Shown one piece after another: positions 3,508 through 38,118 of a stretch of 44,021 nucleotides of DNA. Source of the DNA: Mustelus asterias (lineage: Eukaryota). The notes under the pieces were generated by a model. The model was not told where the DNA came from. It saw only the letters and a program-made list of their open reading frames with translations, and searched no databases. The translations under genes and the position numbers were made by a program. The stretch spans positions 1 through 44,021 of the forward strand of contig NW_027592658.1 in NCBI RefSeq assembly GCF_964213995.1, in the 5' to 3' direction. The first letter of the stretch is position 1. Each line of letters begins with the position of its first letter.

Positions 3508-3780
3508 CTCCGAGATCCAGCAGAGTCTTTCTTCAGGAGAGAGGTGTTCAGAGGGATTTGGTGTGTTCGCTGAAGAACTTCTTCCCGAGAAACATTAAAG
3601 TGAGCTGGCTGAGGGACGGAGTGGCCATTGTCGACGGAGTGGAGACAACTCATATTGTACCTCAAGACGACAAAACGTTTCAGGCGAGAAACATCCTCTC
3701 ATTGAATGGAGATGTGGGCGGTTCTTACGTGTGTCAAGTGGAACATGAGGCTCTGACGGAAAAACTTCACATACCGTTCA
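3508..3780 (+). CDS. Ig C1-set exon of an MHC-family chain (class I alpha3-like / W-category beta2-like)
   Basis: Acceptor ttggttccacag, donor A|gtaagt, 273 nt, phase 1-1. Translation PRSSRVFLQERGVQRDLVCSLKNFFPRNIKVSWLRDG...HIVPQDDKTFQARNIL...YVCQVEHEALTEKLHIPF has the C1 motifs LxC..FFP..I.V.W and YxCxVxH. Confidence 0.92.
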
Positions 3781-3861
3781 GTAAGTACATGCAAAACACC
3801 AATCCCCCAAGCATGCTCTGCCTTTACTCAGGTCAATCTTCTCACCAATCTCCACTTTCAT

Positions 3862-4170
3862 ACAATAGAATCCCCACAGTGCTGAAGGAGGCCATTCGGC
3901 CCATCGAGTCTGCACCGACCACAATCCCACCCAGGCCCTATCCCTATATCCCCATGCATTTTCCCTCACTCGTCCCCCTGACACTAAGGGACAATTTATC
4001 ATGGCCAATCAACCTAACCTGCACATCTTTGGACTGTGGGAGGAAACCGGAGCACCCGGAGGAAACCCACGCAGACACGGGGAGAATGTGCAAACTCCAC
4101 ACAGACAGTGACCCAAGCCGGGAATCGAACCCAGGTCCCTGAGTGCTAACCACTGTGCCACCGTGCCACC
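3862..4170 (-). mobile_element. HE1-like V-SINE (tRNA-derived)
   Basis: Reverse strand reads ggcacggtggcacagtggttagcac...gggttcgattcc, then the V-domain gtgtctgcgtgggtttcctccgggtgctccggtttcctcccacagtccaaag and a CR1-like tail. Confidence 0.88.
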
Positions 4171-4196
4171 CACTTTCTCACACTCTCTCACACTAT

Positions 4197-4611
4197 TCTT
4201 TTCTCTGGAGCGTCGGAGGCTGAGGGGTGATCTTATCGAGGTCTATAAAATAATGAGGGGCACAGATCAGCTAGATAGTCAATATCTTTCCCCAAAGGTA
4301 GGGGAGTCTAAAACTAGAGGGCATAGGTTTAAGGTGAGAGGGGAGAGATACAAAAGGGTCCAGAAGGACAATTTTTTCACACAGAGGGTGATGAGTGTCT
4401 GGAACAAGCTGCCAGAGGTAGTAGTAGAGGTGGGTACAATTTTGTCTTTTAAAAAGCATTTAGATAGTTACATGGGTAAGATGGGTAGAGAGGGATATGG
4501 GCCAAATGCGGGCAATTGGGACTAGCTTAGGGGTTTAAAAACAAAGGGGGTGGCATGGACAAGTTGGGCCGAAGGGTCTGTTTCCATGCTGTAAACTTCT
4601 ATGACTCTATC
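4197..4611 (+). mobile_element. CR1 LINE 3' fragment
   Basis: FSLERRRLRGDLIEVYKIM...FFTQRV..VWNKLP plus the 3' tail gggccgaagggtctgtttccatgctg. Confidence 0.92.
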
Positions 4612-5208
4612 TCCATATTCCTCATTCCCACAGAACCGAAAGATCCAAATGTTTCTGTAATATTTCATTGGATGATAACTTTGTTGTTAAGGCCAGCATC
4701 TATTGCCCATCCCCAGTTGCCTCTTGGAGGGCAGTTGAGAGTCACCCACATTGCTGTGGCTCTGGAGTCACATGTAGGCCAGACCGGGTAAGGACGGCAG
4801 ATTTCCTTCCCTAAAGGACATTAGATTTTTCCAACAATCGACGATAGCTTATCAATGGTTAAAAGACTAGATTGTACAGAAATGTGATTAATTGGTGAAG
4901 GAGAATTTTTGCTGTATGAAGTGGAATTTCTGTTGAATTGAACTTTTTACCGAGACTAGCTTTCGATTCCAGCTGCGACGGTGCGATTGGAACCAATCCC
5001 ATTGAATCATCCCTACATGCAGAATGATGGCATTTGGCCCATCGGGTCTGCACTGACTCTCTGATAGAGCATCTTACCAAGGCCTCACCCATAACCCCAC
5101 ATATTTACCCCCCAATCCACCTCACCTGTACATTTGTGGACACTAAGGGACAATTTAGCATGGCCAATCCACCTCACCTACACATCTTTGGACACTAAGG
5201 GGCAATTT

Positions 5209-5508
5209 GGGTGACACAGTGGGTTAGCGCTGCTGCCTCACAGCGTCAGGGACCCGGGTTCCATTCCCGGCTTGGGTCAGTGTCTGTGTGGAGTCTGCAC
5301 GTTCTCCCCGTGTCTGCGTGGGTTTCCTCTGGGTGCTCCAGTTTCCTCCCACTGTCTGAAAGACGTGCTGGTTAGGGTGCATTGGCCATGCTAAATTCTC
5401 CCTCAGTGTACCCGAACAGGCGCTGGAGTGTGGCGACGAGGGGATTTTCACAGTAACTTCATTGCAGTGTTAATGTAAGCCTACTTGTGACATTAATAAA
5501 GTTTAAAC
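5209..5508 (+). mobile_element. V-SINE with an alternative tail
   Basis: tRNA-like head and V-domain, tail ...gtgttaatgtaagcctacttgtgacattaataaa. Confidence 0.85.
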
Positions 5509-5519
5509 TTGAATGTAGC

Positions 5520-35414: not shown

Positions 35415-35532
35415 CTGGCAGCATGTTAGGAGAGAAAAGAGCTGACGTTCCGAGTCCAGATGACCCTTTGTCAAAGCTTTGACATCTGGACTCGAAACGT
35501 CAGCTCTTTTCTCTCCTTACAGATGCTGCCAG
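35415..35532. repeat. Palindromic element built from two inverted hammerhead-like modules
   Basis: Arms aggagagaaaagagctgacgtt / aacgtcagctcttttctctcct around the perfect palindrome tgtcaaagctttgaca (35469-35484). Confidence 0.8.
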
Positions 35533-36012
35533 ACCCGCTGAGGTTTTCCAGCATTTCCTCTTTTGGTTGCAGATTTCAGCATCCGCAGTAATTTGCTTTT
35601 ATCCGAGTAAACCTCCTCTGTGCTGCCTCCAATGATAAAATATCTTCCCTTATATAAAGGGACCACATCGGTACACAGTATTGTAAATGTAGCCTCACTA
35701 ATATCTTGTACAGATGCAGCAAGACCTCTTCACTTTAATACTCCTAAAATCCAGCTTTCCATTGGCCTTCCCTATTACTTTCTGCACCTGTGTGCTAGCA
35801 TTCTGACGTTCATGAACAAGGAGTGCCCCGAGTCCTTTGTGCTACAGCTTTCTGCCTCTCTCCATTTAAATAATCCTTCCCAATCTCTCTCCCAAACAAA
35901 CAGTCTCACATTCCCACATTGAATTCCATTTGCCAGTTTCCTGCCTATCAGACGGCGATGGAATGATTGGGACCATGCAGGTGAGAAGTCCCCAATTAAA
36001 CCATGGCAAGGT

Positions 36013-36355
36013 GAGGCGATAGGCTAGTAGTATTATTGCTAGACTATTAATCCAGAAACTCAGCTATTGTTCCGGGGACCCGGGTTCGAATCCCGCCACG
36101 GCAGATGGTGGAATTTAATTTTAATTTTAAAAAATCTGGAATGAAGAATCTACTGATGACCCATTGTGGATTGTCAGAAAAACCCATCTGGTTCCTTCAG
36201 GGAAGGAAATCTGCCGTCCTTACCCGGTCTGGCCTACATGTGACTCCAGAGCCACAGCAATGTGGTTGACTCTCAACTGCCCTCCAAGGGGCAACTAGGG
36301 ATTAGCAATAAATGCTGGGCCCAGCCAGCGATGCCCGTGTCCCACAAAGAGTAAA
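36013..36355 (+). mobile_element. tRNA-derived SINE family B
   Basis: Full copy similar to 9273-9620. Confidence 0.87.
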
Positions 36356-36859
36356 AAAAATCTCGATGAAGACACATCAAAGTCATCAAAGACTTTGCCT
36401 CCGACTTATACAACATCTTTTCCCGAAGGTCGGGGAGTCTAAAACTAGAGGGCATAGGTTTAAGGTGAGAGGGGAGAGATACAAAAGTGTCCACAGGGGC
36501 AATGTTTTCACACAGAGGGTGGTGAGTGTCTGGAACAAGCTGCCAGAGGCAGTAGTAGAGGCGGATATCTTTTAAAAAGCATTCAGACAGTTACATGGGT
36601 ACGATGGGTATAGAGGGACATGGGCCAAATGTTGGCAATTGGGACTAGCTTAGTGGTTAAAAGTGGGCAGCATGGACAAGTTGGGCCGAAGGGCCTGTTT
36701 CCATGCTGTAAACCCCTGACTCTAAAACATCCACATTCTGGAACTGTTCACTGTTAGACAGGCAAACGTGGTCACTCAAATTCCCAGATGGTGGTCAGGA
36801 TAATGTCACCAGAAGGGTAATCCAGAGGCTCAGCGTAATGGGACATGAGTTCAAATTTG

Positions 36860-37217
36860 GGTCAGCACGGTGGCACAGTGGTTAATGCTGCTGCCTCATA
36901 GCGCCAGGGACCCGGGTTCAATTCCCGGCTTGGGTCACTGTCTGTGCGGAGTTCGCACGTTCTACCTGTGTCTGCGTGGGTTTCCTCCGGGTGCTCTGGT
37001 TTCCTCCCACAGTCCAAAGATTTGCAGGTTAGGTGGATTGGCCGTGCTAAATTGTCTCTTAGTGTCCAAAGATGTGTAGGTTAGGTGGATTGGCCATGGT
37101 AAATGGTGTGGGGGTTATGCCAGGGTGATGGGGGGGTGTCTGGGTGATAAGATCTGTCAGAGTCAGTGCAGACTGAATGGAATAAGTGGCCTCCTTCTGC
37201 ACTGTATGGATTCTATG
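36860..37217 (+). mobile_element. HE1-like V-SINE
   Basis: cagcacggtggcacagtgg head, V-domain, CR1-like tail ggcctccttctgcactgtatggattctatg. Confidence 0.87.
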
Positions 37218-37866
37218 GTTCTCTTGATCTCTCTCCATCTCTTGCCCTGTCTNNNNNNNNNNNNNNNNNNNNNNNNNNNNNNNNNNNNNNNNNNNNNNNN
37301 NNNNNNNNNNNNNNNNNNNNNNNNNNNNNNNNNNNNNNNNNNNNNNNNNNNNNNNNNNNNNNNNNNNNNNNNNNNNNNNNNNNNNNNNNNNNNNNNNNNN
37401 NNNNNNNNNNNNNNNNNNNNNNNNNNNNNNNNNNNNNNNNNNNNNNNNNNNNNNNNNNNNNNNNNNNNNNNNNNNNNNNNNNNNNNNNNNNNNNNNNNNN
37501 NNNNNNNNNNNNNNNNNNNNNNNNNNNNNNNNNNNNNNNNNNNNNNNNNNNNNNNNNNNNNNNNNNNNNNNNNNNNNNNNNNNNNNNNNNNNNNNNNNNN
37601 NNNNNNNNNNNNNNNNNNNNNNNNNNNNNNNNNNNNNNNNNNNNNNNNNNNNNNNNNNNNNNNNNNNNNNCGCCCCCACTGCCCCCCTCCCCCGCCAACC
37701 TTGTGCCCCCGGGATGTACAAGTGTTGGGGATGTCCGCCTGCCACCTGGGCAGACACAGGCAGTGAGCATGGGACTGGCACAGCAGCCCTCGGGCACGGC
37801 ATGTCTGGGCATGACGGAGAGGGAATGCTGCCACTGGGGGCCACAGCCCTGGTCTCCCCGACTCAC

Positions 37867-38118
37867 CGTTCGGGGGGTTTGAGAAGTTGGTGGCCACGGC
37901 AGCTAAGGCCATCGTCCGGCGGAGTGAGGCGATGGTCCTGTTGCGATCCCATGCCAGTTCGACAAGAACCCCACGGTATTCATCCAGGCCCTCCTCCAAC
38001 AAATGGATGCTGGTGTCATAATAAATAAAGATGCGGCCGTCAGCCGTGACTTCACACATCATCTCCAGGGGGCTGGGATCGTCCGTGACGTAACAAGCAA
38101 CCAGAACTCTCCATGTGT
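37867..38118 (-). CDS. WA: alpha1 (membrane-distal) exon of the class II alpha-like / W-category alpha chain
   Basis: Acceptor tttctctttgcctttcag, donor AAC G|gtgagt, 252 nt, phase 1-1: TWRVLVACYVTDDPSPLEMMCEVTADGRIFIYYDTSIHLLEEGLDEYRGVLVELAWDRNRTIASLRRTMALAAVATNFSNPPN. Length, the DG....F..D strand motif and the C-terminal NxS..N fit class II alpha1. Confidence 0.85.

What the first reader, a model, noticed from the sequence alone, without database searches (positions are those of the whole stretch)
3508..38118. Convergent pair of complementary MHC chains: a possible heterodimer with class I-type interfaces and two membrane anchors
Seen: the plus-strand C1 domain reads IVPQDDKTFQ. It has the Pro of class I alpha3 (RPAGDGTFQ, P235) and lacks the Trp of class II beta2 (NGDWTFQ, W153). 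The minus-strand gene supplies a Trp at the B2M W60 position instead. Both genes have Gly-patterned TM helices of the kind that drive class II alpha/beta pairing, and their 3' coding ends face each other about 14 kb apart. Inference: these are a linked WA/WB-type pair. The tail-to-tail orientation excludes a shared bidirectional promoter between them. The alternative is that the plus gene is a non-classical class I heavy chain, since its distal exons are outside the window.
Basis: inference. Interest (0 to 1): 0.88.

Follow-up and report, generated by a model that had tools for sequence, protein, structure and literature searches.

The report
Shark W-category MHC genes, tail-to-tail
Two neighbouring shark immune genes, one alpha-type and one beta-type chain of the already published "W-category" MHC, lie tail to tail here, so this re-sights a known family and does not show that these two chains are partners.

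Summary
The window is Mustelus asterias DNA from a 48.4-kb scaffold. On the plus strand lie the last five coding exons of a beta-type MHC chain (Ig exon 3508-3780, TM exon 8477-8590, three tail exons, stop 10720-10722). RefSeq already models it as a partial protein. On the minus strand lies an alpha-type chain (alpha1 38118-37867, alpha2 26717-26436, TM/tail 24802-24609), also in RefSeq; its leader exon is outside the window. The stops are 13,886 nt apart.

Both genes belong to the W-category MHC of Okamura et al. 2021 (PMC8713811). The alpha chain is 88% identical to a banded houndshark protein and groups with records named "WA". Its alpha2 domain matches beta2-microglobulin best and has L37 and W61. 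The beta chain has P57 and no W61. 16 of 18 aligned relatives carry one beta1 domain, which rules out a class I heavy chain.

The partner claim is not shown. Published WA/WB pairs are head-to-head, so these convergent genes are probably neighbours from two adjacent pairs. The arrangement also depends on a scaffold join at gap 20394-20536, which I could not test. First-reader notes of this scan list further W-category loci on other pieces of this genome. Verdict: already known, low interest.

The parts
3508..3780 (+). WB-type gene, beta2 Ig-like (C1-set) exon; 273 nt, phase 1/1. Carries VPQDDKTFQ (P57, K61 in Okamura's numbering).
   Evidence: Splice sites read. Pfam C1-set E 4.9e-17. 100% identical to RefSeq XP_078063912.1, partial, M. 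asterias.
8477..8590 (+). WB-type gene, connecting peptide/transmembrane exon (114 nt): ...NEGLIIIGAVLGILGICFALVMGILSCCILN.
   Evidence: tblastn of P0001 residues 91-129. This stretch is conserved in 16 of the 18 aligned relatives; the other two lack it.
10320..10349 (+). WB-type gene, cytoplasmic exon 1 (SGQFNVDLT).
   Evidence: Matches P0001.
10479..10586 (+). WB-type gene, cytoplasmic exon 2 (AKFTKRSGSCQPNLCNSSVRSSSSNTSNTSNTSCTS), a Ser-rich tail conserved across elasmobranchs.
10694..10722 (+). WB-type gene, last coding exon (ADDLTKSHA) with stop TGA at 10720-10722.
37867..38118 (-). WA-type gene, alpha1 (membrane-distal) exon; 252 nt, phase 1/1.
   Evidence: Identical to XP_078063910.1 (P0008). 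No Pfam family at E<=1. In the AlphaFold model it forms four strands followed by a long helix.
26436..26717 (-). WA-type gene, alpha2 Ig-like exon; 282 nt, phase 1/1. Has L at the Ig core Trp position (AITLQVNG) and W61 (GENWRF). An internal cryptic donor near 26553 is used by RefSeq isoform X2.
24609..24802 (-). WA-type gene, connecting peptide/TM/cytoplasmic exon with stop TGA at 24611-24609. The TM reads LGVLVGGVAVGALGTVLGI.
   Evidence: tblastn of P0008 residues 216-279 gives 100%.
20394..20536 (.). Assembly gap in the intergenic stretch between the two 3' ends. The convergent arrangement depends on this join.
37253..37670 (.). Assembly gap inside the 11.1-kb alpha1-alpha2 intron of the WA-type gene, 196 nt beyond the alpha1 donor. 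It is not in coding sequence.
1..3469 (.). 69-nt satellite (about 49 copies). It fills the window upstream of the beta2 exon to within 38 nt of its acceptor. The beta1 and leader exons are not in the window.
   Evidence: tblastn with six full-length WB relatives finds no beta1 match anywhere in the window.

Best explanation
The window holds parts of two W-category MHC genes of the starry smooth-hound, Mustelus asterias. On the plus strand is the 3' part of a WB (beta-chain) gene. On the minus strand is a WA (alpha-chain) gene, complete except for its leader exon. They lie tail to tail.

W-category molecules are class II-style heterodimers. Each chain has one membrane-distal domain, one C1-set Ig domain and its own Gly-rich transmembrane helix. 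The interdomain contacts, however, use class I-type residues. WA alpha2 plays the part of beta2-microglobulin: a Trp at position 61 is expected to project into the platform, and Leu replaces the Ig core Trp. WB beta2 plays the part of class I alpha3: Pro at position 57 and no Trp at position 61.

Shown here: gene structures, residues, homology and fold. Inferred: that the products form WA/WB heterodimers at the cell surface, as Okamura et al. showed for salamander chains.

Also inferred: the two genes here are most likely neighbours from two adjacent head-to-head WA/WB pairs of a tandem cluster. On that reading the WB's own WA would lie to the left of the scaffold and the WA's own WB to the right. 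They would then not be a dedicated convergent pair.
For: Species and gene models. The Ig exon is 100% identical to XP_078063912.1, and the three minus-strand exons match XP_078063910.1. Both are M. asterias proteins on one 48,403-nt contig.

WA membership.
- P0008 is 88% identical to Triakis scyllium protein BBG06243.1/BBO94055.1.
- A full HMMER scan of 1.84 billion representatives gives 252 hits at E<=1e-3. The top 7 are elasmobranch alpha chains at 39-63% identity.
- That scan also finds Ambystoma 'WA_02 precursor' at E 8.7e-15, and representatives of clusters that hold Danio 'WA_01/WA_03' and Protopterus 'WA_01'.
- In a 140-row Ig-domain tree, the window's alpha2 sits in a 13-row clade with WA_02 (SH-aLRT 92) and in an 8-row elasmobranch clade (94). 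WA and the beta2m-like rows lie on one side of a branch (87), away from the class II chains.
- In the PDB search of the alpha2 exon, 58 of the 60 rows shown are beta2-microglobulin or beta2m fusions, the best single chains at E 3e-13.
- W61 is invariant in 20 of 20 WA-type sequences, and 0 of 20 have Trp at position 37.
- Among the 132 hits kept, 37 carry the signature no-W37 plus W61: 16 long chains (14 WA-type; the other two, P0020 and P0143, pair with each other outside the WA group in the tree) and 21 beta2m-sized. 82 carry the class II alpha signature.
- The whole-chain AlphaFold model (mean pLDDT 63; 50-92 by ten-residue block in alpha2, most blocks 77 or more) matches class II alpha chains best. 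HLA-DM alpha is first at E 2.4e-11.

WB membership.
- P57 is invariant, and position 61 is never Trp in 18 of 18 elasmobranch relatives (K3, G6, R7, S1, Q1).
- 16 of 18 have a single beta1-type domain with a Cys pair.
- In the PDB search of the beta2 exon, 14 of the 60 rows shown are class II beta chains and none is a class I heavy chain.

Linkage of WA and WB elsewhere.
- S. torazame genes scyTo_0014255 (WA orthologue) and scyTo_0014256 (WB) lie on one 159-kb contig.
- H. francisci WA and two WB genes lie on one 16.2-Mb scaffold.
- S. canicula has two WA-type loci (three proteins) and four WB genes on one 71-Mb chromosome.

Head-to-head pairs, and a three-pair cluster in the white shark, are reported in PMC8713811, sections read.
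Against: - The beta1 and leader exons of the plus gene are not in the window, so its architecture is inferred from paralogues and orthologues.
- This WA departs from the published WA alpha2 motif at three of five positions. F replaces Y8 (shared with Triakis; the other 18 of 20 have Y). F replaces L55. H replaces F/Y57 (unique among the 20).
- WB has K at position 61, not the 'mostly G' of the paper.
- No record named 'WB' was recovered among the beta-chain hits.
- The 'adjacent pairs' reading is untested.
- Tree support is SH-aLRT only, from a quick search on 94 columns.
Confidence: 0.85

Rival explanations
1. The two convergent genes are a dedicated functional WA/WB pair. They would be co-inherited and co-expressed without a shared promoter, and their products would be each other's obligate partners.
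For: They are the nearest complementary chains on the scaffold, with stops 13.9 kb apart. Linkage of this WA type with WB genes recurs in three other elasmobranchs. The TM and tail of this WB are nearly identical to those of its paralogue P0002 (87% overall), so any WB may be able to pair with this WA.
Against: Published shark, teleost and coelacanth pairs are head-to-head. First-reader notes of this scan, which are unchecked, describe head-to-head pairs elsewhere in this genome. Both 5' ends point out of the scaffold, where the expected partners would lie. No co-expression or binding data could be obtained.
Confidence: 0.25
2. The plus-strand gene is a non-classical class I heavy chain whose alpha1 and alpha2 exons lie outside the window.
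For: It has Pro at position 57 and no Trp at position 61, as in class I alpha3. NCBI's automatic names for some relatives are class I-like: 'zinc-alpha-2-glycoprotein-like', 'H-2 class I ... D-P alpha chain-like' and 'hereditary hemochromatosis protein homolog'.
Against: 16 of the 18 aligned relatives, including a paralogue from the same species that is 87% identical, have a single roughly 90-residue beta1-type domain before the Ig domain, and none has two. The best MHC matches in the PDB are class II beta chains, with no class I heavy chain among the 60 rows shown. The TM has the class II beta-type single GxxxG (PMC13399432 passages).
Confidence: 0.02
3. The tail-to-tail arrangement, or the linkage itself, is an assembly artefact. 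The pieces left and right of gap 20394-20536 would be misjoined or misoriented on a short unplaced scaffold.
For: The only link between the two genes runs through a gap of estimated length. Its flanks are satellite and LINE debris, with an inverted 66-nt repeat at 17339-17404 and 20745-20810. The scaffold is only 48.4 kb and begins in a satellite.
Against: WA-WB linkage is seen independently in three other elasmobranch assemblies. Gaps of odd, estimated size usually come from spanning read pairs or long reads, which also fix orientation; this is general knowledge and was not tested here.
Confidence: 0.1
4. The plus-strand gene is a 5'-truncated relic. A satellite or transposon insertion would have removed or displaced its beta1 and leader exons.
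For: A 69-nt satellite runs from the window's start to 38 nt before the beta2 acceptor. The same satellite flanks a Penelope-like RT/GIY-YIG ORF at 13707-15446. RefSeq marks the protein as partial.
Against: All five exons keep open frames, matching phases and consensus splice sites. The tail is conserved residue for residue with functional-looking paralogues. 'Partial' is equally explained by the contig ending.
Confidence: 0.1

Closest known systems
W-category MHC (WA/WB), Okamura et al., PNAS 2021 (PMC8713811). First isolated from the banded houndshark Triakis scyllium, which by recall (no call) is in the same family as Mustelus.
   Same: [quoted passage not shown]
- WA alpha2 has W61 and a non-Trp residue (L) at position 37, and resembles beta2m.
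- WB beta2 has P57 and no W61.
- The exon structure is like that of class II genes.
- The family is multigene, and WA is linked to WB.
- The WA is 88% identical to a T. scyllium protein.
   Different: - The orientation seen here is tail-to-tail, not the published head-to-head.
- This WA has F8, F55 and H57 in place of Y8, L55 and F/Y57.
- This WB has K61 in place of the usual G61.
- The M. asterias genes are not named in any paper found by the two searches.
Classical and non-classical MHC class II alpha/beta chains (DR, DQ, DP, DM).
   Same: Domain order, exon phases and exon sizes (alpha1 252 nt, alpha2 282 nt, beta2 273 nt, beta TM 114 nt) are as in class II. Both TM helices carry GxxxG motifs. 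The best whole-chain structural matches of the WA model are class II alpha chains, with HLA-DM alpha first.
   Different: Class II alpha2 keeps the core Trp37 and lacks W61: 82 of the 132 hits kept carry that signature, and the window does not. Class II beta2 has W61, where the window has K. The alpha1 exon hits no Pfam MHC_II_alpha model.
MHC class I heavy chain with beta2-microglobulin.
   Same: The alpha2 exon's best PDB sequence matches are beta2m, which shares W60/61 and Leu at the core Trp position. The beta2 exon shares Pro57 and the absence of Trp61 with class I alpha3 (paper). The only PDB hits of the alpha1 exon, all non-significant, are class I alpha1 domains at E 0.14-0.8.
   Different: The beta2m-like domain is fused to its own distal domain and membrane anchor. 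The heavy-chain-like partner has one distal domain, not two.

Membership tests
W-category MHC, alpha chain (WA) | Class II alpha-type architecture: leader, one distal domain, one C1-set domain, CP/TM/CY. | tested here: met
   The three exons in the window join in phase. They equal RefSeq P0008, which adds a leader. The fold search puts class II alpha chains first.
W-category MHC, alpha chain (WA) | Trp at position 61 of alpha2, the beta2m W60 equivalent. | tested here: met
   GENWRF aligns W-on-W with beta2m. The residue is invariant in 20 of 20 WA-type sequences.
W-category MHC, alpha chain (WA) | No Trp at Ig core position 37 (F or L instead). | tested here: met
   AITLQVNG has L37. 0 of 20 WA-type sequences have W there.
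W-category MHC, alpha chain (WA) | L55 and F/Y57 of alpha2. | tested here: not met
   The window has F55 and H57. The Triakis protein has L55 and Y57. H57 is unique among the 20 aligned sequences.
W-category MHC, alpha chain (WA) | Y8 of alpha2, the partner of WB P57. | tested here: not met
   The window and Triakis have F. The other 18 of 20 have Y.
W-category MHC, alpha chain (WA) | Homology and clustering with named WA sequences; alpha2 nearer to beta2m than to class II alpha2. | tested here: met
   Ambystoma WA_02 at E 8.7e-15. Clusters holding Danio and Protopterus WA are found. Tree clades at SH-aLRT 92 and 94, and WA with beta2m on one side of a branch at 87. 58 of the 60 PDB rows shown are beta2m.
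W-category MHC, beta chain (WB) | Class II beta-type architecture with a single beta1 domain. | tested here: inconclusive
   The beta2, TM and CY exons are present. The beta1 and leader exons are outside the window. 16 of 18 relatives have one beta1 domain and none has two.
W-category MHC, beta chain (WB) | Pro at position 57 of beta2. | tested here: met
   VPQDDKTFQ is present. The Pro is invariant in 18 of 18 relatives.
W-category MHC, beta chain (WB) | No Trp at position 61 of beta2 (mostly Gly). | tested here: met
   K in the window. 0 of 18 have W and 6 of 18 have G. Skate class II beta chains have W at this column.
W-category MHC, gene pair | WA and WB arranged head-to-head as a pair. 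| tested here: not met
   The two genes are tail-to-tail, and both 5' ends leave the window. The head-to-head partners, if any, lie off the scaffold.
W-category MHC, gene pair | WA and WB chains associate and reach the cell surface only together. | not testable with these tools
   This was shown for tiger salamander chains in PMC8713811. No multimer modelling or wet test is available here.
MHC class I heavy chain (for the plus gene) | Two distal domains (alpha1 and alpha2) ahead of the Ig domain. | tested here: not met
   None of the 18 relatives has two distal domains. This is indirect for this gene itself.
Classical MHC class II | alpha2 with Trp37 and no Trp61; beta2 with Trp61. | tested here: not met

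The most novel reading that the evidence does not exclude
In smooth-hounds, the WA of this window may have remodelled the class I-type interface. It has F8, F55 and H57 around the retained W61. This change could have evolved together with a K61-type WB lying tail to tail with it. The convergent pair would then be a lineage-specific functional unit with an altered alpha2/beta2 and alpha2/platform contact, organised differently from the published head-to-head pairs.
Probability: 0.08. Interest if true: 0.4.

Novelty: already known. Interest (0 to 1): 0.22.

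Why it matters
W-category MHC is the proposed intermediate between class II and class I, so each well-resolved locus helps to test that model. This window adds little. It confirms WA and WB genes in a second triakid shark, both already in RefSeq under generic class II-like names.

It does supply three modest points:
- It shows a tail-to-tail WB/WA junction of the kind expected inside a tandem cluster of pairs.
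- It shows that three of the 'class I-type' alpha2 residues are not fixed within the family.
- It shows that the long Ser-rich WB cytoplasmic tail is strongly conserved across elasmobranchs.

It also shows that automatic naming scatters these genes across class I-like, class II-like and beta2m-like labels.

Tried and rejected
- Pfam on the alpha1 and TM exons gave nothing at E<=1.
- The PDB sequence search of the alpha1 exon gave only non-significant class I alpha1 hits (E 0.14-0.8). I treat these as weak hints only.
- I looked for a beta1 exon or a WA leader exon in the window, by tblastn with 10 proteins and by motif look-up. None was found.
- I tried to judge continuity across gap 20394-20536 from its flanks, using six-frame reading and a repeat search. 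Only satellites, LINE pieces and one 66-nt inverted repeat turned up, so there is no verdict.
- HMMER's gapped alignment of alpha2 to beta2m suggested a two-residue insertion. Comparison with WA orthologues shows the ungapped register is the natural one, so I dropped the insertion idea.
Exons were searched one by one. For whole-chain work I used NCBI's own predicted proteins, as returned by the searches (P0001, P0008).
They hold the accession table S3 and the shark locus maps S9-S11. They may already show tail-to-tail neighbours in the white shark cluster, and may settle whether the Triakis record is the published WA.

Full report
WHAT IS IN THE WINDOW

The window has two N runs, at 20394-20536 and 37253-37670. 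It is full of LINE/CR1-like reverse-transcriptase debris and satellites.

The plus strand carries a 273-nt exon at 3508-3780. Its acceptor is ...ttccacag| and its donor is |gtaagt, and both ends are in phase 1. It reads ...DLVCSLKNFFPRNIKVSWLRDGVAIVDGVETTHIVPQDDKTFQARNILSLNGDVGGSYVCQVEHEALTEKLHIPF and scores as a C1-set Ig domain at E 4.9e-17.

Downstream in matching phase lie four more exons:
- a 114-nt connecting-peptide/TM exon at 8477-8590 (LIIIGAVLGILGICFALVMGIL);
- three cytoplasmic exons at 10320-10349, 10479-10586 and 10694-10722, the last ending in a TGA stop at 10720-10722.

Upstream of 3508 there are only 38 nt of unique intron. Beyond that a 69-nt satellite runs to the window's first base. 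The distal-domain exons of this gene are therefore not in the window.

The minus strand carries three exons:
- a 252-nt alpha1 exon at 38118-37867;
- a 282-nt alpha2 exon at 26717-26436, C1-set at E 1.1e-16;
- a CP/TM/cytoplasmic exon from 24802 to a stop at 24611-24609.

All three are in phase 1. The TM reads LGVLVGGVAVGALGTVLGI, which contains GxxxGxxGxxxG. The two stop codons face each other 13,886 nt apart.

THE GAPS, WHICH THE SCAN'S PROGRAM ASKED TO HAVE TESTED FIRST

Neither gap touches coding sequence.

Gap 37253-37670 lies in the 11.1-kb alpha1-alpha2 intron, 196 nt beyond the alpha1 donor. Exon order, strand and phase across it agree with a protein from another species that reads straight through the junction (P0009). 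I take that join as sound.

Gap 20394-20536 lies in the intergenic stretch between the two 3' ends. Its left flank is a 46/50-nt satellite and its right flank is LINE debris. The only structure linking the two sides is a 66-nt inverted repeat at 17339-17404 and 20745-20810. I could not test continuity. The convergent arrangement and the 13.9-kb distance rest on that scaffold join. I did not try to fill or look up the N letters.

WHOSE GENES THESE ARE

Exon-wise searches of the large protein collection identified the genome.

The plus Ig exon is 100% identical to XP_078063912.1, 'SMH class II histocompatibility antigen, beta-1 chain-like, partial [Mustelus asterias]'. It was one of 7 hits at E<=1e-5 among 10 candidates.

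The alpha2 exon is 100% identical to XP_078063910.1, 'RLA class II ... DP alpha-1 chain-like isoform X1'. It was one of 3 hits among 5 candidates. Both proteins are on one 48,403-nt contig.

My exon model of the minus gene equals isoform X1 residue for residue over the three exons. The leader exon of that protein is not in the window, so it lies beyond 44021. Isoform X2 uses a GT inside the alpha2 exon, near 26553, and removes the second half of the Ig domain.

Whole-chain analyses used these RefSeq proteins as returned by the searches.

THE MINUS GENE IS A W-CATEGORY ALPHA CHAIN

Okamura et al. 2021 defined W-category MHC. I read the outline and the first three of the four parts of the Results and Discussion section of PMC8713811. 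Their definition has three elements:
- WA alpha2 with W61, L55, F/Y57 and Y8, and no Trp at the Ig core position 37;
- WB beta2 with P57 and no W61 (mostly G).

The family was first isolated from the banded houndshark, Triakis scyllium.

The window's alpha chain is 88% identical overall to a T. scyllium protein with accessions BBG06243.1, BBO94055.1 and BBO94056.1. The record's name is cut off in the output. The paper's accession table is in a closed supplement, so I infer but cannot show that this protein is the published WA.

A full HMMER scan of 1.84 billion representatives with P0008 gave 252 hits at E<=1e-3, 21 at E<=1e-10 and 7 at E<=1e-30. The top seven are elasmobranch alpha chains at 39-63% identity. 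They come from Heterodontus, Scyliorhinus torazame, S. canicula, Chiloscyllium, Pristiophorus, Amblyraja and Hemitrygon. Further down come records explicitly named WA:
- Ambystoma 'WA_02 precursor', E 8.7e-15;
- the cluster holding Danio rerio 'WA_01' and 'WA_03';
- the cluster holding Protopterus 'WA_01'.

I built an Ig-domain tree of 140 rows. Of the 150 listed hits I kept the 132 that are at most 400 residues long and dropped the 18 longer multidomain proteins. I added the window's alpha2 and seven WB beta2 domains. The window's alpha2 falls in an 8-row elasmobranch clade (SH-aLRT 94), inside a 13-row clade with Ambystoma WA_02 (92). The WA group and a 21-row group of beta2m-sized proteins lie on one side of a branch (87), away from 101 class II-type rows. 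This was a quick search on 94 columns with no starred branch around the window's sequence, so it supports the placement but does not prove it.

Other lines agree:
- Of the 60 PDB rows shown for the alpha2 exon, 58 are beta2-microglobulin or fusion constructs matched in their beta2m part. The other two are H2-DM alpha (E 5e-11) and an IgA heavy chain.
- Across 20 WA-type sequences W61 is invariant, and none has Trp at position 37.
- Among the 132 hits kept, 37 carry the signature no-W37 plus W61: 16 long chains and 21 beta2m-sized. 82 carry the class II alpha signature, 9 carry both Trp residues (class II beta-like), and 4 carry neither.
- An AlphaFold2 model of P0008 with a 20-sequence alignment is only moderately confident: mean pLDDT 63, alpha1 about 40-60, alpha2 50-92 by ten-residue block with most blocks at 77 or more. 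It shows four strands and a long helix, then an Ig domain, then a TM helix.
- The model's best PDB matches are class II alpha chains over 190-200 columns, with HLA-DM alpha first at E 2.4e-11.

The chain therefore has a class II alpha build and a beta2m-like Ig domain, as published.

This gene departs from the motif in three places. It has F for Y8, a change shared only with Triakis; the other 18 of 20 sequences have Y. It has F for L55. It has H for F/Y57, which is unique among the 20. Each is a single amino-acid replacement relative to the Triakis protein.

THE PLUS GENE IS A W-CATEGORY BETA CHAIN, NOT A CLASS I HEAVY CHAIN

A search with the RefSeq partial protein P0001 found 19 proteins at E<=1e-3 among 87 candidates, all from elasmobranchs. 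I aligned 18 of them, P0001 included, leaving out P0206 and P0207, which cover only about half of the query. The alignment shows:
- Pro57 is invariant.
- Position 61 is never Trp (K in 3, G in 6, R in 7, S in 1, Q in 1).
- 16 of 18 have one roughly 90-residue distal domain with a Cys pair between the leader and the Ig domain, and none has two. The remaining two are P0001 itself, which is partial, and one oddly annotated Pristis protein.

Aligned to skate class II beta chains, the window has P where they have S, and K where they have the W of DGDWTYQ. In the PDB search of the beta2 exon, 14 of the 60 rows shown are class II beta chains. [quoted passage not shown]

The TM has the single GxxxG that a 2026 paper reports for the W-category beta chain (PMC13399432, passages only). 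The window's WA TM, by contrast, lacks the upstream Cys of the CxxGxxxGxxGxxxG string that paper mentions.

No record named 'WB' turned up. WB membership therefore rests on the motifs, the architecture of relatives and linkage to WA. NCBI's automatic names for these proteins range from class II beta to 'zinc-alpha-2-glycoprotein-like', 'H-2 class I' and 'hereditary hemochromatosis protein homolog', which reflects their mixed character.

ARE THE TWO GENES 'THE PAIR'?

Linkage of this WA type with WB genes is general:
- In S. torazame the neighbouring gene models scyTo_0014255 (WA orthologue) and scyTo_0014256 (WB) share a 159-kb contig.
- In H. francisci the WA orthologue and two WB genes share a 16.2-Mb scaffold.
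- In S. canicula two WA-type loci (three proteins) and four WB genes share a 71-Mb chromosome.

However, the paper states that WA/WB pairs of sharks, teleosts and coelacanth are head-to-head, and that the white shark has a cluster of three presumable pairs. In a row of head-to-head pairs, the WB of one pair and the WA of the next are tail to tail. That is the configuration in this window, where both 5' ends point off the scaffold.

tblastn with six full-length WB relatives found no beta1 exon on either strand of the window. This includes the 5.9 kb upstream of the WA alpha1 exon.

First-reader notes of this scan, which I could not check, describe head-to-head W-category pairs on two other pieces of this genome and a further WB on a third. 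My reading is therefore that the window shows the junction between two adjacent pairs.

The WB paralogues of this species are nearly identical in TM and tail. P0001 and P0002 are 87% identical overall. In the tree their Ig domains group by species. Physical pairing of this WA with this WB is therefore not excluded; it is simply not shown.

EXPRESSION

Expression could not be tested. The run search listed 10 runs, none on record as RNA. I left that stretch out of all later database, pattern, paper and findings searches.

COMPARISON AND VERDICT

What it works like: a class II-style two-anchor heterodimer with class I-style interdomain contacts.

What it is: a member of the published W-category. 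The window's alpha chain is a close relative of a protein from the species in which the family was first isolated.

In the searchable library, two searches found no paper on these genes in M. asterias. The terms 'W-category' with 'MHC' gave 3 papers. 'Mustelus asterias' with 'MHC' gave 1 paper, on TLRs, seen only as a listing. A third search, 'W category' with 'MHC' and 'shark', gave none. The genes are already in RefSeq under generic names.

The 'convergent pair' idea and the high interest score do not survive comparison with the 2021 paper.

Points noted:
- the tail-to-tail junction;
- the three substituted interface residues;
- a strongly conserved, Ser-rich WB cytoplasmic tail (AKFT.R.G.C...C..S.RS..SN.SN.S..SAD.LTKS.A). 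'Cytoplasmic' occurs only once in the paper's main text, in the introduction.

Noticed in passing
window 10479-10722 (+), and alignment A2: The roughly 55-residue cytoplasmic tail of WB chains is conserved almost residue for residue from Mustelus to sawfish and sixgill-type sharks. It reads AKFT.R.G.C...C..S.RS..SN.SN.S..SAD.LTKS.A and is Ser-rich with repeated N-x-S/T. This suggests a trafficking or signalling role. The word 'cytoplasmic' occurs once in the main text of PMC8713811, in the introduction.
   Followed up: partly
window 26545-26560 (-): The codons for H-G-E-N just before W61 create a consensus donor (G|GTGAGA) inside the alpha2 exon. RefSeq isoform X2 (P0010) uses it and loses strands E-G and the second Cys of the Ig domain. 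It is probably an aberrant or non-functional splice form.
   Followed up: partly
window 1-3469, 12287-13378, 15778-16707, with the ORF at 13707-15446 (+): The same 69-nt satellite occurs three times. Two of the arrays flank a 579-aa ORF with reverse-transcriptase motifs and a GIY-YIG-like C-terminus, which looks like a Penelope-like element. The third array abuts the WB beta2 exon. The satellite may be part of that element's termini.
   Followed up: no
window 25025-26024: A 37-nt satellite (27 copies, 91% matches) fills most of the 1.6-kb intron between the WA alpha2 and TM exons.
   Followed up: no
window 17376-18404 and 19868-20225: Related 50-nt and 46-nt satellites lie left of the intergenic assembly gap. 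A 66-nt inverted repeat (17339-17404 and 20745-20810, 89% complementary) brackets the gap region. This is a plausible cause of the assembly break.
   Followed up: partly
window 29318-33710 (-), 6277-8083 (+), 39969-42656 (+) and others: There are many CR1/L2-like LINE copies, one nearly full length: endonuclease and RT ORFs of 157 and 735 aa at 31049-33710. They sit inside the 11-kb WA intron and in the flanks.
   Followed up: no
proteins P0014, P0017 and P0195-P0204: Automatic RefSeq names for W-category chains are inconsistent. They include 'beta-2-microglobulin-like', 'zinc-alpha-2-glycoprotein-like', 'H-2 class I', 'hereditary hemochromatosis protein homolog' and various class II alpha or beta names. 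One DDBJ record, named 'class II beta chain, WB_05' for Danio, sits in a 90%-identity cluster of WA sequences.
   Followed up: no
window 37868-38116 (-): The alpha1 domain has a Cys pair in its first two strands and two N-x-S/T sites (NRT in the helix, NFS near the end). Both triakid sequences have a 3-residue deletion after YYDT relative to other shark WA chains.
   Followed up: partly
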